Source: Gracilinanus agilis
Lineage: Eukaryota
DNA length: 64,000 nucleotides
Direction of reading: 5' to 3'
Assembly: GCF_016433145.1 (NCBI RefSeq)
Contig: NC_058132.1
Location: forward strand, 346,083,751-346,147,750
The notes below the pieces were generated by a model, which saw only the letters and a list, made by a program, of their open reading frames with translations, was not told the DNA's origin and made no database searches. The stretch's first letter is position 1, and each line of letters starts with the position of its first letter. Made by a program: the position numbers and the translations under genes. This document shows, in pieces, positions 1,552-50,806 of this stretch.

Positions 1552-1617
1552 TTCTTGGTACTATGAAAATACAGTCAAGTGACAAACATTAGTGCCACAA
1601 AGGCCTTGGCAGCTGGG

Positions 1618-1657
<40 letters not shown>

Positions 1658-1658
1658 A

Positions 1659-1848
1659 GGGGGCAGCTGGGTAGCTCAGTGGATGAGAGCCAGGCCTAAA
1701 GACGGAGGTCCTAGGTTCAAATCTGACCTCAGACACTTCCCAGCTGTGTGACCCTGGGCAAGTCACTTGACTCCCATTGCCTACCCTTACCACTCTTCTG
1801 CCTTGGTGACTCCAAGACGGAAGGTAAGGGTTTAAAAAAAAAAAAAAA
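1659..1848 (+). mobile_element. Opossum-type tRNA/CORE SINE (SINE1_Mdo-like) with a short internal deletion in the tail
   Basis: GGGGCAGCTGGGTAGCTCAGTGGA head, GTTCAAATC B box, CORE GTGTGACCCTGGGCAAGTCACTT, tail GGAAGGTAAGGGTTT plus poly-A. Confidence 0.9.
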
Positions 1849-2075
1849 GTGGGAAAGAGGAAGGAAGGAGGAAAGGAAGAAAAAACGGGTAAATGGGAAA
1901 GAAAAACAGCAAAAGAGAAAGGAAGGGGAAAAGAGAAACAGAGAAAAGGAGAGAGGAATGGAAGGGAGAGAAAAGGGGGAAATGAAGCAGAGAAAGAAGG
2001 GCAGAAAAAGAGGGAAAGATAAGAAAAAAAAAAATCCAACAGCCAAAAAATCCGAATACTAAAAAGAAAAAACAA
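1849..2075 (+). repeat. Purine-rich (GA/A) low-complexity tract
   Basis: Almost exclusively A and G. It explains the F/S/L/P-rich and K/R/E-rich spurious ORFs here. Confidence 0.9.
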
Positions 2076-2379
2076 ATTACACACACGTTTGTTATCTATC
2101 GCCCCAAAGGAAGGCTCGGTCTGTCCCAGGAGGATGAAGCGAGCCCAAAGCCGGCACTTACTGAGGGTCCTAGAGAAGCGCCCCGGTGTCAAGGACTGCA
2201 GTGAACTAGTAGTGTCAAGATGGCCAAGGTCCCAAATTCGTCTCATACATTTACTAAGTGTATGGACTTGGGGCAAGTCACTTAACCTTTCTGGTCCTCA
2301 GTTTCTCCATCAGTAAAAAAACAAAAAACAAACCAAAAAAAAAAACGAAGGAAACCAGATGACCTCCAAAAATTTTACG

Positions 2380-27885: not shown

Positions 27886-28527
27886 ACCCCCAATCAAATT
27901 TTAAGTGACTGATTTTAAGAGACAATTTTAGGAAATAAATTTTAAGATTCTGAATGAAATAGTCAAAATACCTCACCAAGAAGAAAATTATTTTGGAGGC
28001 TCTACCTGAAAAGGTGAGAATAAGATACTCTTTTTGTTTGTTTTAAATCTTTTGAAAGAGTCTTGCCTAAATTATGTTATATGTCCAAATACTGATAAGA
28101 AACCTATGTCCAATACTAGGTATTAAGTTCTGGATTCAGAGTTTATAGAATCAGAGTCAGAAGAACTAGATTTAATTGAGGTTCTGCTATTTATTTGTTG
28201 TGTCACGTTGGGTTGGGAAAATGCCTAAAGACTTGGGTCTAAATTTCCACATCTGTAAAAATAAGGGGGTTGAAATAGATCATTTTTAAGGTTCACACTA
28301 ACAGTATATATTACTTGAAAAGTCATCCATTTCTGAGTCTGAGGCTTTTCTAGCCTTTAAAAGCCCTTCATTAAAAATTGCCTTAAAAGACATTCTAATC
28401 TCCATTTATTGGTTTTAAGACATAAAGATATTAAATCCAGAACATACATGTAATGGAATTATTAAACATTGTAAACAATATATAAATGAGAAGCAAAACC
28501 TGTCAGACAGAATGAAAGAAAACTTAC

Positions 28528-28618
28528 CCAAGGTGGCAGCTGCAGTTTTCCCTTGGACATGGCTGGTAATTCTCTACAGACTTGTTAATTTGGTCAATAA
28601 ATCCTTTCCACTTTGTAC
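28528..28618 (-). CDS. POGLUT1: POGLUT1 exon 2 (91 nt, starts in phase 1)
   Basis: TAG acceptor, GTAAGT donor. Encodes (G)[29 protein letters not shown](G). Confidence 0.97.
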
Positions 28619-29889
28619 CTAAAGAAGAAAAGTCAAAGACAGATGGACAATAACTAATAATAATAATAATAATAATAGTTAGCACTTACATAGTGCTTTA
28701 TGGTTTGGAAAATGCTGTATATAAGTAATCTCATTTATTAATCTCATTACCTTTCATTTCATATATAAGGAGATATATATACACCTCATTATAGTACATA
28801 ATAATACCTCATATATATGAGGTACTATTAAAATCCTCATTTTACAGATGACAGAGGTTACAGTGATTTATCCAGGTTCACACAGTTAGTGAGAGGCAGA
28901 TTTTGAACTCAGGTCTATCAGAATCCAAGCCCCACATTCTGTCCACTGACCATTTACCACCCCGCTAATTAAAGCAAGTGCACAAAATTGAGGGATGACC
29001 AAAATCAGTAGAGCTAGTTTTGGTGTCCAGGAATCAAAATTCAAATCCCATCTCTTATCTGTGTGACCTTGGGAAAATAATTTAACTTCTCCCATTCTTC
29101 TTATCTGTAAACTGAAATCGAGGAACTAGATGACCCTTTCCAGCTCTAAAGTTATGAGGAAAAATTCTTCTCTGTTGCTATGCATCATTTTCTTCAGCAA
29201 GCCTGTCCTGTCTCATCTGCCAGATAATCTGCCTTCTTCCCTCAAACAAGCCCTCCCAATCTAGTTGTCACATTTTATCACACAACCAGTCAAACTAGAC
29301 TGTTACTCCCTGTCTCGGAACCACAGAAACTTTCCCTTGGCTTTTCATTCTCTGAAATCTTTAAAAAAAGAACACAGAGCCTCAAGCCTTTGGGAGGCTT
29401 TCCTAAGGAGCCTAGCTTAGTCTGGACACATCGATCCATGCCTCGCGAGAGCAAAGCCGCAAACCCTTGGGCATTTGGGGTCCCAGAAATAATTTTTGTG
29501 CTCTCACCTCATCCATAACACTGGGACACCCTGGGCATTGGAGAATTAGTTACACTTTTAATTTTTTTTTTTACTCAATCCAGCTCACAACCAGTACCTC
29601 ACGTGAAACCACATTTTACCGTGGTTCCTTTGTCTCCTGCGCTCCTCTGGTGTCCAGCATTTGATCCATTGATCTCTCCAGGGAAAAGTGTTTGGGGAAT
29701 CAGGTTGATCAAGGGGCAGGGAGTCAAAAACGCAGATATATCTGCGCTCGAGTTTCGGTTCTGTTACCAGATTGCTCTGTGCCTAGGAATGTCACTTCTG
29801 TCTGAGGGGCGCCCTTTACTCATTAGTAAAAGGAAAGGGGAAAACCAGATGATCTCAGATGTTCCTTCCCAGCTCTAATGATCTGGGAC

Positions 29890-30680
29890 TCCGGGAATGC
29901 ACTGCCAACTGCGCCCGCCGCCGCCACCGCCCCAGCCCCTAGTCCAGCCCTCGGCCCCAGCCTGGCCCCTGGCCCCGGCCATTCCCACCCCTCAACCTCC
30001 GCCCCAACCCAGCGAGAGATGAAGGTGGAAAACAGCTAGGGTCTTTCCTCCTCATCCCATTTCCAGCGAGGCCGGTTTAGCTTCCTCCAAAAAGCGAGCA
30101 CTGAGCTTTTCCTGACGCTCACCTGGGTCCTTCAGTCGACTCTGAGTCACCGGGAGCAGCAGCAGCAACCACAACTGCAACCACGAGGGCAGCGGCAGCG
30201 CCATCGGGGACAACCCCGTAGCTGCTCCCGGAGCCCAGGAGGAAGAACTGCCCCGCACAAAGATGGCGGCGAAGGAGCAGGCCCACGTGGGGCTGCATTG
30301 TACCCGCACAAAGATGGGGGCCCGAGGGACTTCTCAGAACCCTGAGTTTATGAACTGACGGACTGTGCAATTGTTGGGTTTTGGGATCCCTCCTCCATCT
30401 CTCCTGGTGGCGGTGCACGTCCTTTCGTGGCACTTGAGGGGGATTTAGATAATCATTGATTCCACTAAGTTGTTGTTGGGTAGCAGGGGATATCTAGTCT
30501 CGCTCATTCGCTTTCTCCTCCAGCGAATAGGCTCCCAGTAAGGAAGCTGACAGGAGGGCAAAAGACGCCAGAGACAAAGCTGTCCAGGAGAGGAGCATGC
30601 GCAGTATCTCTCTAGTCATCTCAAATCACTCCCCCACCTCCACCCCCGACAACATGCGCATGCATGCATTCATTCATTCA
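29890..30680 (-). promoter_or_regulatory. POGLUT1 CpG-rich promoter and first-exon region
   Basis: CpG/GC-rich. YY1-type AAGATGGCGGC at 30260-30270. NRF1-like GCATGCGCA at 30595-30603 and ATGCGCATGC at 30654-30663. Confidence 0.7.
30123..30204 (-). CDS. POGLUT1: POGLUT1 exon 1 coding part (82 nt; signal peptide)
   Basis: ATG at 30204, MALPLPSWLQLWLLLLLPVTQSRLKDP, phase-1 donor CAG|GTGAGC. The 11 exons sum to 1176 nt, an open 391-aa protein O-glucosyltransferase 1. Confidence 0.93.
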
Positions 30681-32594: not shown

Positions 32595-34200
32595 GAATCT
32601 CAAGTAATGAAAATAGAAATAGCATTTCCAGATTCCAAACTATCTTGTAAAGCAATAACAATTAAACATATTTGTTGCTTTTTAATGAATAGAAAAGTAA
32701 ATTAGTGGGAAATATTAAACTATCAAGACCCTGAATAAAAAAGAACCCAAACTAAGGCAGCATTCAGGTAAATTCAGTAGTATAAACTACTAGGAGAAGG
32801 ACTCCATATTTGATAAGAGCTGCTTAGAAAAATAGAAAGAAATTAGATAGAAATTGGGTTTAGACTAGCATTTTACACTGTATACCACAATACATTACAA
32901 ATGCATACATGACAAAATTTTTTTTAACCACATCATTTAGAAAAATAAGAGGAAAGCACAACAAGTCAGAGGAAGGTTTTCTTAATCAAAGAAGACAGAG
33001 AGGTGAACATTAAAAAAAGATCTATACTTTCCTCAGTGTTGGAAAGTCCAAATGTGGAAACTTCTTCCACATGACTTAGATAAGTTTGAGAGAATTACCT
33101 GAGATATACCGAGGTTAAGTGACTTGTTCAGGATAAACTATTGTCAAAGGTGATTTTTGAATTCTGGTATTTCCAGCTTTAAGCCCTGAATATTATCAAC
33201 TATATAATGCTGCTTCTAAAAAGTATTTTTTTAAAACCCTTACTTTCCGCTTTAGAATCAATACTATGTATTGGCTCCAAGGCAGAAGAGTGGTAAGGGC
33301 TAGGCAATGGGGGTAAAGTGACTTGCCCAGGGTCACACATCTAGGAAATGTCTGAGGTCAAATTTGAACCAAGGACCTCTTGTCTCTAGGCCTGGCTCTC
33401 AATCCACTGAGCTACCTAACTGCCTCCTTAAAAAGCATTTAAAAAAAGGCAATTTTGATTTAAAACAATTTTTTAAAGTTTTACATGAAAAAAAAATCAA
33501 TTGGCCTGGAATAAGGAATAAAATATTGAGAAAATCTTTATGTCAAATGTTTCTGATAAAATCATATATCCAGAATAATAGAGGGATATACAAGACCAAG
33601 TGCTATTTCCCAATAAAGTTTATGAATAAATTATTCAAAGAAAGGCTATTAGGAAGACAAAGGAGACTATTAGCATTTGAAAGATTTCCCAGATCAGTAA
33701 TAAGAGAAAAGAAAATGAAAAAAGCTTTAAGATTTCAACTCCCAATCAATAAATTGGTGAAAATTACAAAAGATAGAATTTTTGTGGGAAGGATGTCAAA
33801 AGACAGGCACAGTCATGTATCACTGATGTAGTTGTGAACTGGTCCATTCTTGAGAATAATTTTGAATTATTCAAGAAAAGCAAAAATATTGTTTATATCT
33901 CTTGTTCCAGAAATCCTGCTATTGAACATATACATCAAAGAAGATAGATAGAAGGAAAGACTATATACATATCAAAAAGAGCATAACAACACTTTTGAGG
34001 GGTAACAAAGAACTGGAAATAAAATGAGTGTCCATTGGCTAATAAAATGCCTGAACAGCTTGAATTAGCCAAAATGTAATAGAATATCATGTCGGTATAA
34101 GAAATAATGACTCTATTCAGAAAAATGTGGAAAGAGGAATATAGAATGAAGCAAGTAGAAGCAAGAAAACAATGAACACAATTACAATAATATATAAGGA
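32595..34200 (+). mobile_element. Old L1 ORF2 3' part and 3' end, interrupted by SINEs
   Basis: TAGCATTTCCAGATTCCAAACTATCTTGTAAAGCA resembles the ORF2 LPDFKLYYKA motif. Continues through C-terminal and 3' UTR-like text. Confidence 0.65.
33227..33425 (-). mobile_element. SINE1_Mdo-like SINE
   Basis: Antisense full-length copy. Confidence 0.88.
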
Positions 34201-41299: not shown

Positions 41300-43050
41300 A
41301 AGGTGGTAATCTGGACATGCTGATCTAGACATATCCAAAGACAGAAATCAAGATGCTGAGGGGATTGTGCAGTTTTGGTGGCCCCTAAGAAATAGGTCCC
41401 TTAGATATAGGAAACCTATACATTTCCCTAGCAGGAAGACTAAGATCTCTAGCACATGGGTAAAGATGATGTCTAATAACTCAAAGGCCCAGAAAAGACA
41501 TCTGCCATTATTATTAGCCCACCAAAGGATGAGTAGTTGCCAACTTTTCCCTAATCCAGAATCCTGGGAAACGAAAACACAGAGGCAAAGGAACTATGAT
41601 TAGAAATTTTAAATATTTTTTTTTCCTTCTCAGCATGAATGTGGGAATAAAGGGTTCATAGTAGAAAACTATTGTTCAAAAATGGCTACAAGGTGTGCCA
41701 AGAAATTCTCAGAGGTACCTTGATAATGGTATTGCCCCAAAGCTGAATTTATCTTTCCTTACACAAAAATTGGGAAGGAACACAAGCAAGTGGAAGAAAG
41801 CTTGAACAGATCTTTTCCATGTTATTGGGTAGCTTCTAGAAGACTGTGTCTAGATAACTGACTTTTAACTATGATGTATGATGTGGGGATAGAGAAGGGC
41901 TATTTTCTTTTAGGTATTTACTGTCTCATCACCTAGCAGCAACAGCACACTAGAGTCTAACAGAAAGCAAAGAAGAAAGCAATTACTAATGGTTGGGGAA
42001 TTTTTTTTTTCCTATCCAACATTTTTGCCTTATTTTTCCATCTAAAAGACTCATATCTGAACAAAAGATTTTATTTGTAAGATTTACAAGTTCTATAAGT
42101 GGTTGTGGAGAATCATAATCTTGGGAGTCAGTTAATGTAAGGAACAGGACTGTTTTGTGAACTTTGAGGGATCCTTTACAATGCCCAAACAGCAGACAAT
42201 GAATATAATCCACATGGGTCCCAACCTGCACAGCAACTCTCATCAAGGACAGTTACATGAATCAAAATGAAAAGTCAAAGCTATCAGTACCAACTATTAT
42301 TCAGTTAGTCAAATTGTCTTTTTCCACAACAAATTTAGCAAGTGTCCAACTGATGTGTTGTAAGGCAACTGCAGCATGGTAGCAGCAGCCAGTAGGTATG
42401 CGTTGCATATGTTGGGTCCTCTACTATCTGTTATCCCAACTTAGGAAATTTCAGAAGCTTGAGCACTCCAGTGAAAAGTGTAGGGTGCTGGGGTTTTAAC
42501 AGGAAGAGTCAAGATGTCATTTCCCTGTTTCTATTTAGTTGTATAGTTGGAAATATACCAAAGCCCAGGTTCATTTATAATTCTTTTAAAATCTCATTTT
42601 GTAGGGTTACAGAATCAGGAGTTTCAAGTACATGTGAAGAGAAGGTAAAAATATTAACAGACTCGATCCCTAATATTATTCAGATGGAAGTCTGTGGAAC
42701 TTCCAACTTTATCCCCATACTCCCTCAGGAAGCACCCTGGAATCCTTCATGGTCTACCCTAAAAAATGGGTTTGCCATAAAAATAAAAAATCAAACACAT
42801 TACTAGCATTAAATTGAAAGTAAGGTTCAGATCATATAAGTTTCTACCATCCAGCCTAGTTACCCCACGCATCAGGAACTAAAGAAAGAAAAACTATTCC
42901 CTTGACTTCCAATGGTGACCCCTTAAAAAGTAAAAAACACATGACAACATACTACCTGATATCAACTGAATATTCCAAAGCCATTGATACAGCAACTTTT
43001 CATCAGAAACATAGGGTGGCCCAGCCCTCTGTAGATGTGAGGGTCATTGG
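41300..43050 (+). mobile_element. Heavily decayed CR1/L3-like LINE ORF2 remnant
   Basis: Relics of the endonuclease NKFL..L.DNF region near 41697-41745, an NYRPVSLTS-like relic near 42890-42915 and YSKAIDT (FSKAFD RT motif) near 42970-42990. Many stops and frameshifts. Confidence 0.5.
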
Positions 43051-43390
43051 TTCATTTCTAACTCAGTAATATCCAAATATGTCCTAGATACAGTTGGGAG
43101 GGAGGGATTCGAAATGGTGAGAAAGAAGGGTAAGCAACAAGAGAATCAATTTATGAAGTACCAAAGTTAGAGAAGTAGGTTGTATGCACAGTGGATGAAA
43201 TCAAAGGCCAGTTTGTAAAGCACAATCCAGAAGGGCCAGAGGTAAAGGGATAAGTCTATGTATCAAGGTAAGGAAATCAGGAACAAGTTAACAGTCCGAG
43301 GGAGCAGACAATTAACAGTCCAAGGCCAAAGCGAGGGTCAGAAAAACTGGATATGGCCAAAGGAAGAGCCTGAGGTCAAGCAAAGAATTC

Positions 43391-44866
43391 TCATAGTTTT
43401 CCAGTTTCAGGGAGGTGGATAGCCTCCTGATCTTCTGGATCAGCTGGTCCTTGCTCACCTCCACTGCCTCCTGATTGGGAAGTAGCCATTTCTGGACGGC
43501 CAGGAACAGTCTGTTCTATTTCCCATCTGTTTGCTGTCCTCCTTCCAATTCTCTCTGCAAATCCTCTTTGGAAACTATATTTTGGCGGGTTTTCATGACA
43601 ACCTCTCTGATGACCAACTGTTCTCTCTTCAACTGCTTTTTGCTGTCTAGTCTGTCGATATTGTTCATAATCTTCTGTCATCTTCTTCCTTAATGTTTTG
43701 CAAATGGCCTTATATTCTGGTCCCTTATCACCCCTAGCTGCCATGTCTCTCCTCTTAGCAAGGAGATTGAGTGTTTCTTGGCTAAGGCGATTTCTGGGTT
43801 CTTTTGGTCTTTTCATTGTAATGATTTTTTTGCACCGGTTAATTTTTTGTAGTAAATGTCGTTCATATTCAGAATCATAGTCTCTGTTTCTGTTCACTTC
43901 CCAGTTTTGGGATTCTACAGTGTGTTGAAAGAGTTCTTCCTCAAGCTGCTGTAATCTCACACAATGCCTTCTTTTCATCTTCATTCTTTCTTCTAATTTG
44001 GTGTTTAATTTAACCTTTGCCCGAACCAATCGATGATATGACTGCATACAGACAACTGATTCTGAAATGACAGCCACATCTGTAACCAGTTGCTTTTTAT
44101 CCGTTAAAATATAGTCAACTTCTTCTTTTATAACTTCATCTGGTGACCATGTCCAGCGCCTTCCTACTCTCTTCATGAAGAAAGTATTCATTATATACAG
44201 GTGTGAGGTTTCTGCATATTCTACAAGCCTTTGGCCTCTTTCATCTCTTGAACCAGAACCATATCTTCCAACATACTCTTCCCCTTCCTCTCCTGTGCCC
44301 ACTTTTGCATTGAAGTCACCAAGTATTAACGTATATGCTGATTCAATTTGGAGGATTTTATCAAGATCCTCGTAAAATTTATCTACTTCTTCTTCCTCTG
44401 CTATGGATCTTGGTGCATAAGCAGCTATGATTTTCATGGTGGCATCTCTGCTGACCCTCATTGTAAGCACTGCAAGGCGAGATGACCAAGTATACCACGA
44501 AATTATATTCCTTGTTGCCTTTGGGCCCACCATGAAACCAACCCCACCAACTCCTTCATTCCCCTCTCCGAGGAGAACTTGCCAGCCATCCTTCCATTCG
44601 GATGAAACTTCTTGCTCTCGTCTAGTTTCATTTATAGCTAGGATATCAATGTGTATGTTTTTAAGTTCCTCGAGTAGCGTGTCTACTAATTCGTCAGTGG
44701 ACAAGGAACCCACGTTGAAAGTCCCAACGGCTAAATCTATGTTAATATAGGGTCTCTTGGCACCCTGGGGGCCCTTTTGCGCCTTTCCGCTTCCGCCTCG
44801 GCCGCCGTCACTGCAGGAGGGGCCATCATAGGGCGGGGGGCCATTTTGTATTTCTGCCCGATTCAT
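43391..44866 (-). CDS. Intact 491-aa ORF: RTE-clade LINE apurinic/apyrimidinic-type endonuclease plus tether, no reverse transcriptase; candidate domesticated gene
   Basis: ATG at 44866 in context AAAACCATGA (the track's start at 44881 is TTG). EEP/APE motifs GTFNV (N51), INETR (E80), AYAP (Y150), LILGDFNAKVG (D184/N186), WTW, VDYIL (D251) and SYH (H278). TGA at 43393-43391. The ORF is certain; gene status is inferred. Confidence 0.8.
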   Translation of the reverse strand: MNRAEIQNGPPPYDGPSCSDGGRGGSGKAQKGPQGAKRPYINIDLAVGTFNVGSLSTDELVDTLLEELKNIHIDILAINETRREQEVSSEWKDGWQVLLGEGNEGVGGVGFMVGPKATRNIISWYTWSSRLAVLTMRVSRDATMKIIAAYAPRSIAEEEEVDKFYEDLDKILQIESAYTLILGDFNAKVGTGEEGEEYVGRYGSGSRDERGQRLVEYAETSHLYIMNTFFMKRVGRRWTWSPDEVIKEEVDYILTDKKQLVTDVAVISESVVCMQSYHRLVRAKVKLNTKLEERMKMKRRHCVRLQQLEEELFQHTVESQNWEVNRNRDYDSEYERHLLQKINRCKKIITMKRPKEPRNRLSQETLNLLAKRRDMAARGDKGPEYKAICKTLRKKMTEDYEQYRQTRQQKAVEERTVGHQRGCHENPPKYSFQRGFAERIGRRTANRWEIEQTVPGRPEMATSQSGGSGGEQGPADPEDQEAIHLPETGKL

Positions 44867-44882
44867 GGTTTTCGCGGTCAAA

Positions 44883-44900
44883 ATAATAATAATAATAATA
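44883..44900 (+). repeat. (TAA)n microsatellite just upstream of the RTE-derived ORF
   Basis: AATAATAATAATAATAAT run. Confidence 0.9.
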
Positions 44901-45319
44901 AGGGAGCACCCAGCGGGCTGACCTTCTGGTGACGAGCCTCTCCACGCTCGGCTAGGCCGGGCCTCCGACGGTAGACATACAGCGTTCAGACGCCTTCAGC
45001 AAGAAATGAATAAAAACTATATTAATAATCATAACAGTAGTTTAACTAACGCCCGGGGGGGTTGGGAAAGGCTTAGGGAACACCATAAGACCAGTGGCTC
45101 AACCGTCGCCGGAAACTGCAAGTCGGGAAGATGTACTACTGCGCAGGTGCCTAAGCACCGGGGACGTGTCCCGCCCCCTGCTCGCACGCGCACTCGAGCT
45201 GCGACGCAGGCTCTGGGAAGGAGAACTCAGGATGGCCAGAGCTTTGAGATCTCCGCCTCTCACAGTGTGTTTAGTTTCCGGGGGCTGGCCGTCGGGCGCG
45301 CCGCTGACGTAATCACTGC

Positions 45320-45577
45320 GCGCTGCCACGTCTCCTCAGCTCCGCGGCAACAGAGACTAGTCAGTGCTGACTGGACTGGTTAGGGCTGTCTGGTCTCCGG
45401 GCGTACGGAGACAGACTGGCAACCCCCTTTCGGATATCGCTGAGGCGACAAGGGACAGCAGGCCTGGAGCGTCGCGGTTGGGGCGGCGGAGGGAACCTGT
45501 CCGCCCGCCCCGGGAACAGCCCGTGAAGCTACCACCACCTTTTTGGGGAACCCGCCCCGCCGTACAGGCCTCCATGC
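45320..45577 (+). other. TMEM39A: Putative TMEM39A non-coding first exon region
   Basis: Candidate donors CTG|GTTAGG (after 45378) and TGC|GTAAGT (after 45577). The TSS cannot be determined from sequence. Confidence 0.4.
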
Positions 45578-47341
45578 GTAAGTCTAGGGGCCGCTGGTCC
45601 TTCTTCGGTTTTGGTCACCTGTTCAGTCTTTCTTTTCTCTTCCACTCTCCTTCATCAGAAGTAGCATCGGGGCAGCCTCCTTTCGGGTTCCCTTCTTTCT
45701 CCTTTTCTCCTTTCTTTCTCCTCCTCTATCTTCTGCAGCACAGAATTAGAAAAGCCTATTTATGAATGAGAGAATTCGAGACTTTTAAATTCCTTCATTC
45801 TCCTCTTGTGTGTTATCCCATTCAGGCTGCTCAGGCAGCGGACACGAGGAGTTAGTAAAAAATCGGCTGTGACGTTTCGGAAACCCGAATTTCTCAGATG
45901 CTTTGTGATGATTCTGGAACACTAAAAGCTGTAATATATGAAATTTGACTCGATGACCCTACCGGAGAGCCCATAATGTAGTCAGTTTAATGGGAAACTT
46001 CATTCCTTCCGGTCATGGATATTTTTTTTTTTCTGAGCAAACTTTTTTAAGGGTTCAGTTTCACAGGATGGCAAGTTCTTTGTTGAAAGGGACTTATGTG
46101 GCTATCTGGGACCATAGTTGGACTCTAGTACAACCTATACCCAGAAAAAAGAAGTCCTCCTAACATACTGGAGCAGAGGTCATAAAGCTTGCGCTTCAGA
46201 TTTTCAGGGAAAGGGAGCGTGGGGTCTTCAGTTGCATCTTATACCACTTTTGGATACCTCTGATTATTAAGAAGTTTTTCATCTTATTAAAATTTTCAGT
46301 TCTTTCCACACATTCATTTTGTGCTATAGAGCAGTTCCTTTTGCTCCTTGGACCCATTTGGCAGTTTGGTGAAGTCTATGTGTCTTTCCATACGTAAATG
46401 CACACATAAAACATACATATTACATAATTTACATACCTAAAATACCTGGCGTTGTAAAGGAAAGCAATTATATAGAAATAGTTATCAAAATAGTTTTAAA
46501 AAACATTCACTGACCGTATTTGTTTCTTAAAATGAAACCCTTGCATGAAAAATTTCTCCTGACCATGAGTTTTTTTCCCTAAGCAAACTTTTAAATTGGT
46601 TTATTATAAGAGACTCACTAGTTCTGTGCTGAAATTAACTTGAGTGATTGTCAGTCCAACCCATACCAGAAAAAAAGTCCCTCTATAAAAATTGGACAAA
46701 GAGTTATCCATCTGTTAACAGCATTTTTAGCATCTAATTTTTGAAAGTACTTCATCATTTAGTATATCACTTGATTCTTATAACATCCTCTTTTGAAAGG
46801 TAAAACAGATCATAGAATTCTTATTTTCCCAGGAAGAAGTGAGTTACACTTAAGTGATTTGCCTAAGGCCCTACGTCCAGTTAGTAGTGAAACTAGTACT
46901 AGAATCTTTTTAGTCCCTGTTTCAGATTCTTTCCAGCATATCACAATGCTCCTTTAGTATTTCATTCGATTGACTGATTAAACTTACATTTCTTGTAATG
47001 CCAGATTGGAATGTAGCATTTGTGTTCTATTAAACAAACATTAAGCACCAATTATGTGCCAGGCACTATACTGAAATACAATACAAAAGGAATTTTTTTT
47101 GGGGGGGGGGTGAAGGGTATGCAGAGATGGGAATCAGGAAATTCTTAATTTAAGAAGGTGGCTCTCAAGCTGAGTCCTGAAGGAAAAGAGAGAGTGAATC
47201 CTAGGGATGGATCTCAGCTTGTTAAAGAGCACAGAGCGTGGTGTAGGAATGTTCTGTTTGAGGGTTAGCAAGATGACCAGTTTGGACAAAACGCATAAAA
47301 AAGAGTATTGTATATAAAGCTGTAAAGATAGGTGGGACACA

Positions 47342-49416: not shown

Positions 49417-49529
49417 ATGCCCGGTGGAAGGAGGGGCCCTAGTCGGCAACAGCTAAGCCGTTCAGCTTTACCTTCTCTACAGACTTTGGTTGGAGGAGGC
49501 TGTGGCAATGGAACAGGTCTAAGAAACAG
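49417..49529 (+). CDS. TMEM39A: TMEM39A first coding exon (113 nt coding; exon probably starts at 49344)
   Basis: [37 protein letters not shown](R) matches the TMEM39A N-terminus. Donor CAG|GTATGG. Confidence 0.97.
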
Positions 49530-49865
49530 GTATGGGCAGAATGGTGCTATTTGTAATGTGATGTGATCAGAAGCCATTAGGCTGCAAAGAGGTATACCTC
49601 ATCAGTAGGTCACTATTAAATACTATTTGAAAGCTTTGAACTATTTTAGAATGTCTTGGATATAGTAATATTGTAATATGGGGATCCCATAGCTAAAGGT
49701 TAGGGAATATATTAGTGTTGTTTCATGGTTAAAAAGAGAATTTTTCCATTAGGTGGTCCTTCCAGCTATTAGCTTTGGACAGTGTAGAAGAAAAAAGTGT
49801 TATTTTGCAAAGAATTGAGAATGGAAGGGTGATAGGTATTGACAGGAAGGAAGTTAAAAGTAATG

Positions 49866-50035: not shown

Positions 50036-50489
50036 TTTTGAAACTAATGGCTAGTGTGAAATTCTGAGATTATAGGCATAATTCCATTACATTGAAGTAA
50101 GAATTGCCCAAATTCTCTTTTAGTAAAATTTGTTGGCAAAAAATGGGTTTGAAATCTGGTTTTACCAAGATTTTTATTTTAATAGTTTATGTTCTAATAG
50201 GATAAGTGGTTTAATTTGTATATTCGTAGGCTTAATTTATCTATGCTAGTCCTGGTCCTCAGTAGCATGATGATTAAGAATTAAGTATATTTTTAGCCAC
50301 CTCATCAAAAGGTGTGGTTTGTAGCAATAGGTGGGGATTCTATTCTAGCTTCTCCCTAATGTCTTTACTAATCTGTCACTTTCACCATCTGAACAGAGTT
50401 GCTACTTGCTTTCGTTTAAATCCGTATTTTATTCCTCAAGTTTGGTACCAATACAGTTGCAACCTTATTTTTTTCACTTTCAAAAAGAA

Positions 50490-50806
50490 AAGCCCTTATC
50501 TTCTATCTTAGAATCGATACTAGGTTTTGGTTCTAAGGCAGAAAAGGAGTAAGAACTGAGCAATAGGGATTAAGTGACTTGCCCAGGGTCACACAGTTAG
50601 GCAATATCTGAGGACAGATTCCATTTTTAACCCCTTTTAAATACTGTGTATTGATTCTAAGGCAGGAGAGCAATAAGGACTAGGCAACAGGATTAAGTGA
50701 CTTGCCCAAGGTCACACAGTTAGAAATTATCTGGGGCTTATTTTGAACAGAGGACCTCCTATCTCTAGTCCTGGATCCCAGTCCACTGAGCTACATACTG
50801 GTCCCC
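50490..50806 (-). mobile_element. Two tandem antisense SINEs (50490-50620 truncated; 50625-50806)
   Basis: The tail plus CORE block GATTAAGTGACTTGCCCA.GGTCACACAGTTAG occurs twice. Confidence 0.8.

What the first reader, a model, noticed from the sequence alone, without database searches (positions are those of the whole stretch)
43391..44866. Candidate domesticated RTE-LINE endonuclease gene head-to-head with TMEM39A
Seen: an unbroken 491-codon ORF with a good Kozak ATG, encoding a full APE-type endonuclease and the RTE tether, then about 40 non-RTE codons and a stop. No reverse transcriptase follows. Every other LINE in the window is riddled with stops. Established: LINE copies are usually 5'-truncated, keeping RT and losing the endonuclease, so this is the reverse of the normal pattern. 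Exaptation of LINE protein domains is rare; examples are L1TD1 from L1 ORF1 and ruminant p97Bcnt/CFDP2 from an RTE endonuclease. Inference: this may be an independent marsupial capture of an RTE endonuclease as a host gene, perhaps for DNA repair, nucleic-acid binding or retroelement control.
Basis: partly seen in the sequence, partly recalled or inferred. Interest (0 to 1): 0.9.

Follow-up and report, generated by a model that had tools for sequence, protein, structure and literature searches.

The report
Marsupial gene born from RTE endonuclease
A jumping-gene (RTE LINE) endonuclease that lost its reverse transcriptase has been kept as an intact, strongly conserved and probably transcribed single-copy gene next to TMEM39A in opossums, Tasmanian devil, koala and wombat; it would be only about the third LINE-derived gene recognised in mammals.

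Summary
A 491-codon minus-strand ORF (44866-43391) encodes the RTE N-terminus, an EEP/APE-type endonuclease and the helical RTE linker. It stops about 95 residues before the point where RTEs begin their reverse transcriptase.

- **Orthology:** intact orthologues at about 96% protein identity lie in the same place (TMEM39A head-to-head, POGLUT1 downstream) in Monodelphis, Tasmanian devil, koala and wombat.
- **Selection:** pairwise dN/dS is 0.04-0.05 with dS 0.31-0.40. Variable sites by codon position are 14/11/120. The linker (aa 286-418) is almost frozen at dN/dS about 0.01.
- **Uniqueness:** the nearest other protein among 1.8 billion representatives is 43% identical, and there is no second copy in the window.
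- **Transcript:** contigs from the window species and from Monodelphis (RNA status is the tool's guess) cover an unspliced transcript of about 3.1 kb. It includes a 1.35-kb 3'UTR conserved at about 90%.
- **Active site:** all catalytic residues are kept except the Asp of the SDH motif, which is Tyr in all five marsupials and Asp in 58 of 59 RTEs.
- **Annotation:** RefSeq calls it "CFDP2-like" or fuses it to POGLUT1. I found no paper on it.

Its function is untested.

The parts
44600..45600 (.). CpG island between the endonuclease gene and TMEM39A; presumed bidirectional promoter
   Evidence: CpG obs/exp is 0.83-1.0 and GC 0.46-0.68. Identity between didelphid and australidelphian sequences is 0.77-0.95, against 0.62-0.78 further out.
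44867..45177 (-). 5'UTR, minimum extent
   Evidence: A 1952-nt contig from the relative (organism A, Monodelphis by its 6-nt insertion) runs unbroken from 43237 to 45177. The region is conserved in three species. A short upstream ORF starts at 45086.
43391..44866 (-). Coding sequence: 491 codons plus TGA
   Evidence: Orthologues are 95-98% identical in protein. dN/dS is 0.037-0.052. Variable columns by codon position are 14/11/120, with one in-frame indel.
44003..44734 (-). EEP/APE-type endonuclease domain (aa 45-288)
   Evidence: Pfam PF03372 and PF14529. AlphaFold pLDDT is above 90. The best solved match is the human L1 ORF2p endonuclease, TM by target 0.75-0.79. dN/dS is 0.018-0.026.
44036..44038 (-). 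Codon 277 (TAT, Tyr) in place of the Asp of the SDH catalytic motif
   Evidence: Tyr in 5 of 5 marsupial proteins and Asp in 58 of 59 RTE endonucleases. Codon verified.
43502..44002 (-). RTE EN-RT linker ('tether'), aa 289-455: helical and basic (net +15)
   Evidence: It aligns colinearly with the linkers of full-length RTEs. Helices are predicted, with pLDDT up to 93. Charge is. dN/dS for aa 286-418 is 0.006-0.012.
43457..43458 (-). GT of a conserved 5' splice site (GGAG|GTGAGC); the exon would end at 43459, after the first base of codon 470
   Evidence: Identical in window, devil and koala (coordinates). This point is where the RefSeq models of wombat and Monodelphis (to POGLUT1 exon 2) and of koala (to a downstream exon) leave the ORF.
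43391..43456 (-). Read-through tail (aa 471-491) and stop codon
   Evidence: The stop is at the same position in three species (TGA/TAA) with no indel. Protein-level constraint is weak: dN/dS 0.7-2.4 across the deep split, on very few sites.
42050..43390 (-). 3'UTR of about 1.35 kb, unusually conserved
   Evidence: Identity is 0.83-0.95 in 150-nt bins, dropping to about 0.75 below 42000. There is no codon periodicity (64/72/53). Exact-match contigs of the window species cover 42105-44359. No Rfam family matches.
42070..42075 (-). AATAAA polyadenylation signal
   Evidence: It is the only AATAAA or ATTAAA between the stop and 41900. It is conserved in three species at the end of the conserved block.
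30123..30204 (-). Context: canonical POGLUT1 exon 1 (signal peptide), about 13 kb downstream of the endonuclease ORF. Approximate 3' boundary.
   Evidence: tblastn with POGLUT1 N-termini gives 100% identity to Gracilinanus agilis POGLUT1 over the exon. It has its own GC-rich region at 29800-30400.
28527..28621 (-). Context: POGLUT1 exon 2, the acceptor used by the fusion gene models. Approximate boundaries.
   Evidence: The fusion proteins P0038 and P0041 switch from the endonuclease ORF to POGLUT1 here.
49417..49560 (+). Context: first coding exon of TMEM39A. Approximate 3' boundary.
   Evidence: The N-terminal peptide is identical to the start of the devil and koala Tmp39 genes.

Best explanation
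This is a host gene made from the 5' two thirds of an RTE-clade LINE open reading frame.

Origin (inferred): an RTE copy landed, antisense, beside the TMEM39A CpG-island promoter before opossums and Australian marsupials split. I recall that split as roughly 80 million years ago, and the split from placentals as roughly 160. The copy lost everything from the start of the reverse transcriptase onward.

What is shown: the gene now exists as one syntenic copy. It is transcribed as a mainly unspliced mRNA of about 3.1 kb. That mRNA has a 5'UTR of at least 311 nt, a 491-codon ORF and a 1.35-kb highly conserved 3'UTR ending at a single AATAAA. The protein has a disordered N-terminus, a well-folded APE/L1-like endonuclease domain and a basic helical linker. 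The linker is the most constrained part.

Mechanism (inferred, not shown): the protein acts on or binds nucleic acid through the nuclease fold and the basic linker. N51, E80, Y150, D184, N186, D251 and H278 are kept, but the metal-holding Asp of the SDH motif is a fixed Tyr. I think a nuclease or phosphodiesterase with changed metal dependence or substrate range is somewhat more likely (about 55%) than a pure binding protein (about 45%).

A conserved donor in codon 470 also allows minor spliced forms, including an in-frame join to POGLUT1 exon 2.
For: - **ORF and domains:**
- **RTE origin and truncation point:** colinear match to full-length RTEs with RT domains. The closest reviewed proteins by fold are the ruminant CFDP2 RTE-endonuclease regions.
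- **Orthology and synteny in five marsupials:**
- **Single copy and not young:** the nearest non-marsupial protein is 43% identical, and no other copy is present.
- **Purifying selection:** dN/dS 0.037-0.052 with dS 0.31-0.40. The dS matches the neutral divergence of the flanks, which are 65-78% identical. The codon-position pattern is 14/11/120. The linker has dN/dS about 0.01.
- **Transcription and transcript shape:** exact contigs of three runs of the window species cover only 41649-44359 and nothing in the flanking 44360-46500. One contig (43004-43609) crosses the donor and the stop unspliced. A Monodelphis contig spans 43237-45177 unspliced. The conserved block ends at the AATAAA.
- **Active site:**. 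In human APE1, loss of the equivalent Asp (D308A) leaves AP-endonuclease activity at mM Mg2+ but removes the exonuclease and nucleotide-incision activities and weakens Mg2+ retention (PMC2923195).
Against: - The runs are only guessed to be RNA. They are contigs, so strand, abundance and rare isoforms cannot be seen.
- The 5' 500 nt of the ORF is not covered in the window species' runs.
- No protein-level evidence exists here.
- Nothing tests nuclease activity or binding. Treating Y277 as equivalent to APE1 D308 rests on motif alignment only.
- The last 21 codons show no protein-level constraint, so the true C-terminus is uncertain.
- RefSeq models in two species prefer a POGLUT1 fusion.
- Orthologue DNA was available for only three lineages. 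dN/dS is pairwise Nei-Gojobori, not a tree-based model.
Confidence: 0.85

Rival explanations
1. The ORF is mainly an alternative first coding exon of POGLUT1. The functional product would be an 833-835-aa endonuclease-POGLUT1 fusion that lacks the POGLUT1 signal peptide.
For: RefSeq models of wombat (two isoforms) and Monodelphis join codon 470 in frame to POGLUT1 exon 2. The GGAG|GTGAGC donor is conserved in three lineages. Constraint on the protein fades after the donor.
Against: - Contigs in two species run unspliced through the donor and the stop.
- The stop position, a 1.35-kb 3'UTR at about 90% identity and a single AATAAA are conserved. In a fusion transcript all of this would be intron.
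- Constraint already relaxes from aa 419 onward, so the drop is not tied to the donor.
- Frame compatibility has a 1 in 3 chance.
- The fusion would put an ER-lumenal glycosyltransferase in the cytosol or nucleus without its signal peptide (inference).
- Devil and koala annotations keep the two genes apart.

Confidence: 0.1
2. It is an ordinary dead RTE fragment that happens not to have decayed yet: a recent insertion, or an open frame by chance.
For: EN-only 'CFDP2-like' predictions in many genomes are simply RTE copies.
Against: The ORF sits at the same syntenic site with alignable flanks in lineages separated by the deepest marsupial split. dS is 0.31-0.40 while dN is 0.011-0.021. The chance of an open frame is about 4e-16. 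There are no similar copies.
Confidence: 0.01
3. The conservation reflects a non-coding function (promoter, enhancer or long non-coding RNA of the TMEM39A/POGLUT1 region), and the ORF is incidental.
For: The conserved block extends beyond the ORF into 1.35 kb of downstream sequence and into the CpG island.
Against: Inside the ORF, 120 of 145 variable columns are third codon positions and the only indel is in frame. The downstream block has no periodicity (64/72/53) and has 140 gapped columns.
Confidence: 0.02

Closest known systems
Ruminant CFDP2 / p97Bcnt (BCNTP97)
   Same: A host protein that keeps an intact endonuclease domain of an RTE-clade LINE without the reverse transcriptase. It is the top hit by fold among reviewed UniProt proteins: Tragulus and Bos CFDP2, E 2e-24 and 8e-24. 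Its function is likewise unknown (PMC12129022).
   Different: - It is an independent event in another lineage. Identity over the endonuclease is only 24-28%.
- CFDP2 arose by RTE-1 insertion into a duplicated BCNT gene and is a chimera with BCNT sequence (PMC12129022). The marsupial protein is RTE-derived over aa 11-454 and shows no BCNT domain in Pfam.
- It sits at a different locus, TMEM39A-POGLUT1.
- The RefSeq name 'CFDP2-like' therefore reflects similarity, not orthology.
L1TD1
   Same: A LINE-derived, single-copy mammalian host gene. PMC4161310 and PMC12129022 describe it as one of very few such cases.
   Different: It derives from L1 ORF1 (an RNA-binding protein), not from an endonuclease. 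Its literature reports positive selection and repeated losses (title and abstract of PMC4161310). Here selection is strongly purifying in every pair tested.
RTE-clade LINE ORF (the ancestor)
   Same: It matches colinearly from the N-terminal region through the endonuclease and the linker. The catalytic N, E, Y, D, N, D and H residues are kept.
   Different: There is no reverse transcriptase, it is single copy, and it is fixed at one syntenic site. It is 57% or more diverged from any RTE protein found, and the SDH Asp is replaced by Tyr.
L1 ORF2p endonuclease, APE1 and ExoIII (EEP nucleases)
   Same: The same fold: TM by target is 0.75-0.79 to L1 EN and 0.62-0.68 to ExoIII-type enzymes and APE1.
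   Different: Sequence identity is 14-18%. A long basic helical extension is present. The metal-site Asp of the SDH motif is missing.
L1 ORF1 exons co-opted into host genes (Lyosin: L1 ORF1p-MYL4)
   Same: A LINE coding segment used as an alternative 5' exon of a neighbouring host gene (PMC12129022). This is what the POGLUT1 fusion models would be.
   Different: Here the fusion is unproven and probably minor, and the captured part is an endonuclease rather than ORF1.

Membership tests
Domesticated transposable-element gene (usual operational criteria) | Single-copy orthologues at a syntenic position across distant taxa | tested here: met
   Window species, Monodelphis, devil, koala and wombat all have the gene between TMEM39A and POGLUT1. 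There are no paralogues in the window or loci.
Domesticated transposable-element gene (usual operational criteria) | Purifying selection on the coding sequence | tested here: met
   dN/dS is 0.037-0.052 with Fisher p below 1e-42. Codon-position pattern is 14/11/120.
Domesticated transposable-element gene (usual operational criteria) | Loss of the parts needed for transposition | tested here: met
   No reverse transcriptase is detectable downstream. The ORF ends about 95 residues before the RT domain of aligned RTEs.
Domesticated transposable-element gene (usual operational criteria) | Expression as RNA and protein | tested here: inconclusive
   Contigs restricted to the transcript-shaped block appear in four runs of two species, but their RNA status is a guess. 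There is no protein evidence.
Domesticated transposable-element gene (usual operational criteria) | A demonstrated host function | not testable with these tools
   This needs a knockout or biochemistry.
RTE-clade non-LTR retrotransposon (as an element) | Single ORF with an APE-type endonuclease followed by a reverse transcriptase | tested here: not met
   The endonuclease and linker are present and the RT is absent. It is derived from an RTE but is not an RTE element.
RTE-clade non-LTR retrotransposon (as an element) | Dispersed multi-copy family | tested here: not met
   No other copy is in 64 kb plus 79 kb of loci. There is one marsupial cluster in the protein libraries. A whole-genome copy count was not possible.
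EEP (DNase I/APE1-like) nucleases | Four-layer alpha/beta sandwich fold | tested here: met
   pLDDT is above 90 over aa 41-290. Foldseek probability is 1.00 to L1 EN, ExoIII, APE1 and TDP2.
EEP (DNase I/APE1-like) nucleases | Complete catalytic set (N, E, Y, D, N, D, and the D-H of the SDH motif) | tested here: not met
   E80, Y150, D184, N186, D251 and H278 are kept, and N51 is kept in the TFNV motif. The SDH Asp is Tyr277 in all five marsupials, against Asp in 58 of 59 RTEs. Activity may persist in altered form (APE1 D308A, PMC2923195).
CFDP2 / BCNT family (the RefSeq name) | BCNT-derived N-terminal region and orthology to ruminant CFDP2 | tested here: not met
   Pfam finds only the EEP domains. 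Identity to CFDP2 is 24-28% and confined to the endonuclease. Lineage and locus differ.

The most novel reading that the evidence does not exclude
A marsupial-wide gene at least as old as the split between opossums and Australian marsupials was born when the TMEM39A bidirectional CpG promoter captured the 5' part of an RTE. It encodes a still-active nuclease with a rewired metal site (Asp to Tyr) and an invariant helical linker, and serves a core cellular task such as DNA or RNA end processing. It would be the first stand-alone LINE-endonuclease gene in mammals. It may also give POGLUT1 an alternative endonuclease-fused isoform.
Probability: 0.3. Interest if true: 0.85.

Novelty: new member of a known kind. 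Interest (0 to 1): 0.74.

Why it matters
A 2025 paper (PMC12129022) names only two LINE-derived genes in mammals: L1TD1 and ruminant BCNTP97/CFDP2. This locus is a clean additional case and an independent second capture of an RTE endonuclease.

Three things make it useful:
- It is conserved across all marsupial lineages I could test, with very strong constraint. Two recruitments of the same retroelement domain can therefore be compared directly.
- The fixed Asp-to-Tyr change in an otherwise intact active site, together with a nearly invariant linker, gives concrete biochemical hypotheses.
- Monodelphis is a laboratory animal, so the function can be tested.

It also corrects database practice. 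The gene is mislabelled 'CFDP2-like' or merged into POGLUT1. That merger even pulls POGLUT1 and this gene into a single 90%-identity protein cluster.

Tried and rejected
- **Fusion junction:** the second read-laying run, on POGLUT1 exons 1-2, was meant to look for the fusion junction.
- **Dromiciops:** the POGLUT1 locus with a 10-kb flank reaches only to the equivalent of window ~36200, short of the ORF.
- **Cluster listing:** a second listing of the protein cluster returned the same 15 members, so 13 members stay unseen.
- **RT remnants and extra copies:** searches with RTE proteins for RT remnants or further EN copies in the window and loci found nothing.
- **Embedded RNAs:** an Rfam scan of 41500-46000 gave only a sub-threshold chance hit.
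- **Promoter scan:** the bacterial-type promoter and terminator scan is irrelevant here.
- **Solved structures by sequence:** no match.
- **Nearest RTE relatives:** their names are a mix of invertebrate and unnamed metagenomic sequences and do not identify the source RTE lineage.
- **Literature:** searches for CFDP2 with marsupials, POGLUT1 with retrotransposons, and LINE-derived endonuclease genes in Monodelphis found no description of this gene.
- **Earlier scan notes:** none on similar ORFs elsewhere in this genome.
- **Rejected readings:** recent insertion, chance ORF, and purely non-coding conservation (see rivals).
Full report
**Observation**

On the minus strand an ATG at 44866 opens a frame that runs 491 codons to a TGA at 43393-43391. 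No other ORF in the 64-kb window exceeds 233 codons. At this base composition an open run of 491 codons has a probability of about 4e-16. Pfam places the Exo_endo_phos and Exo_endo_phos_2 families on aa 48-281.

**What the protein is made of**

An exhaustive HMMER search of 1.84 billion representative proteins gives 9,330 hits. Those sampled are RTE-type endonuclease or endonuclease-RT proteins, many labelled 'craniofacial development protein 2-like'.

A full-length RTE with both domains (P0146) aligns colinearly with aa 11-454. Its RT Pfam domain begins about 95 residues after the alignment ends. The ORF therefore holds the RTE N-terminal region, the endonuclease and the whole EN-RT linker, and breaks off just before the RT. 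tblastn with RTE proteins finds no RT remnant downstream and no second EN copy in the window.

An AlphaFold model built on a 64-sequence alignment gives four regions:
- aa 1-40: disordered.
- aa 41-290: a confident nuclease fold, pLDDT above 90.
- aa 289-424: helices.
- aa 421-491: low confidence.

The best solved match is the human L1 ORF2p endonuclease (TM by target 0.75-0.79), followed by ExoIII-type enzymes and APE1. The linker is basic, with net charge +15.

**Orthologues and synteny**

The only close relatives form one cluster of marsupial RefSeq and GenBank proteins:
- Koala XP_020841521, 'CFDP2-like'.
- Tasmanian devil XP_031815553, 490 aa.
- Wombat and Monodelphis 'POGLUT1 isoform X1', 833 and 835 aa.

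Over the ORF these are 93-98% identical to the window protein. The next best protein anywhere is 43% identical. In devil, koala, Monodelphis and wombat the divergent upstream neighbour is the Tmp39 (TMEM39A) gene, and POGLUT1 lies downstream.

In the window the layout is as follows:
- TMEM39A's first coding exon starts at 49417 on the plus strand.
- A CpG island spans 44600-45600.
- Canonical POGLUT1 exon 1 lies at about 30204, and exon 2 at about 28621.

The window's POGLUT1 exons match Gracilinanus agilis exactly where they are cleanly bounded. The window is therefore probably from that species or a very close relative.

**Selection**

Codon alignments of the window, devil (L001) and koala (L002) ORFs gave these figures by the Nei-Gojobori method:

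| Measure | Value |
|---|---|
| dS | 0.31-0.40 |
| dN | 0.011-0.021 |
| dN/dS | 0.037-0.052 |
| Fisher p | 1e-42 to 1e-49 |

Of 145 variable columns up to the splice donor, 120 are third codon positions. The single indel is one codon. The flanking non-coding DNA of the same three species is 65-78% identical, so dS is about the neutral rate.

By region, dN/dS is:

| Region | dN/dS |
|---|---|
| Endonuclease | 0.018-0.026 |
| Linker aa 286-418 | 0.006-0.012 |
| aa 419-472 | 0.20-0.25 |
| Last 19 codons, deep split | 0.7-2.4 (very few sites) |

This excludes a young insertion, a chance ORF and purely non-coding conservation. It also shows that the linker, not only the nuclease, is under very strong constraint.

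**Transcript**

High conservation (0.83-0.95 identity in 150-nt bins) extends as one block from about 45600 to about 42000, then falls to about 0.75. The part below the stop shows no codon periodicity. It ends at the only AATAAA in 1.5 kb, at 42075-42070, which is conserved in all three species.

Three small runs of the window species give exact-match contigs only between 41649 and 44359, and nothing on the flanking 44360-46500. One contig (43004-43609) crosses both the splice donor and the stop without a break. A run of a relative gives a single 1952-nt contig from 43237 to 45177. That relative carries the 6-nt insertion that distinguishes the Monodelphis protein.

Together these fit a mainly intronless mRNA of about 3.1 kb. 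It would have a 5'UTR of at least 311 nt that starts in the CpG island, and a 1.35-kb 3'UTR.

Caveats: the runs are only guessed to be RNA, they are contigs, and the 5' 500 nt of the ORF is uncovered in the window species.

**The POGLUT1 connection**

Codon 470 contains a GGAG|GTGAGC donor that is identical in three lineages. RefSeq models use it in three ways:
- In wombat and Monodelphis it joins in frame to POGLUT1 exon 2, skipping the signal-peptide exon.
- In koala it joins to an exon at the far end of the 3'UTR.
- In one devil model it joins to a short terminal exon.

I consider the fusion a minor or by-product form, for four reasons:
- The unspliced form is what the contigs show.
- The stop, the 3'UTR and the polyadenylation signal are conserved.
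- Constraint already fades from aa 419, so the drop is not tied to the donor.
- The fusion would strand a lumenal enzyme without its signal peptide.

**Active site**

Against 59 RTE endonucleases, the marsupial proteins keep E80, Y150, D184, N186, D251 and H278, and N51 in the TFNV motif. The Asp of the SDH motif is Tyr277 in all five marsupials and Asp in 58 of 59 RTEs. The codon is TAT at 44038-44036.

In human APE1 the corresponding D308A mutant keeps AP-endonuclease activity at millimolar Mg2+. It loses the 3'-5' exonuclease and alpha-dA incision activities and holds Mg2+ poorly (PMC2923195). The change need not kill catalysis, although a bulky Tyr may do more than Ala. Whether the protein cuts or only binds is open. 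I lean slightly toward an altered enzyme, because every other catalytic residue has been held for so long.

**Comparison with the known**

By fold the top reviewed proteins are ruminant CFDP2 (p97Bcnt), at 24-28% identity confined to the endonuclease. CFDP2 arose from RTE-1 insertion into a duplicated BCNT gene (PMC12129022). The marsupial gene has no BCNT part, lies at another locus and occurs in another lineage. It is an independent capture, and 'CFDP2-like' is a similarity label.

PMC12129022 lists L1TD1 and BCNTP97 as the few LINE-derived mammalian genes. My literature searches found nothing on this locus. It is therefore a new member of a known but very small class. Gene-prediction pipelines already see it, but I found no paper that recognises or studies it.

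**Verdict**

Confidence that this is a domesticated, selected, protein-coding RTE-endonuclease gene common to marsupials is about 0.85-0.9. The mechanism (nucleic-acid binding or processing through the nuclease fold and basic linker) is inferred. The fusion isoform and the function remain to be tested.

Noticed in passing
protein cluster of P0001: The 90%-identity cluster mixes ordinary POGLUT1 proteins (389-407 aa) with the endonuclease proteins. The 816-835-aa fusion gene models bridge the two. This is a database artefact that hides the endonuclease gene under POGLUT1 names.
   Followed up: partly
L002:7814-14776 (koala), equivalent to window ~43050: A koala POGLUT1 gene model (397-aa product) starts its coding range inside the endonuclease gene's 3'UTR, about 340 nt after the stop. 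This suggests that read-through transcripts from the upstream promoter feed into POGLUT1.
   Followed up: partly
window 45086-45042 (-): A 14-codon upstream ORF lies in the presumed 5'UTR. Its ATG and surrounding sequence are conserved in devil and koala. Two further upstream ATGs at 45032 and 44978 are less conserved.
   Followed up: no
window 44872-44910: A (TTA)n or T-rich microsatellite lies a few bases upstream of the start codon. It is a poly-T run of different length in devil and koala.
   Followed up: no
window 42002-42012 (-): A run of nine to ten A is conserved in all three species exactly where the conserved block ends, about 60 nt past the AATAAA. It could mark the cleavage region or be a relic of the original insertion's end.
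   Followed up: no
window 50038-50505: A non-coding block 80-82% identical between didelphid and australidelphian genomes. It has stop codons in all three plus-strand frames and lies after TMEM39A's first coding exon, so it is probably a conserved intronic element.
   Followed up: partly
window 1575-2276 (-) and 33364-33831 (+): These are the next longest ORFs in the window (233 and 155 aa). Neither has a Pfam match.
   Followed up: partly
window 29800-30400: Canonical POGLUT1 exon 1 has its own GC-rich region with only moderate CpG obs/exp (0.49-0.59). This is weaker than the island shared by TMEM39A and the endonuclease gene.
   Followed up: no
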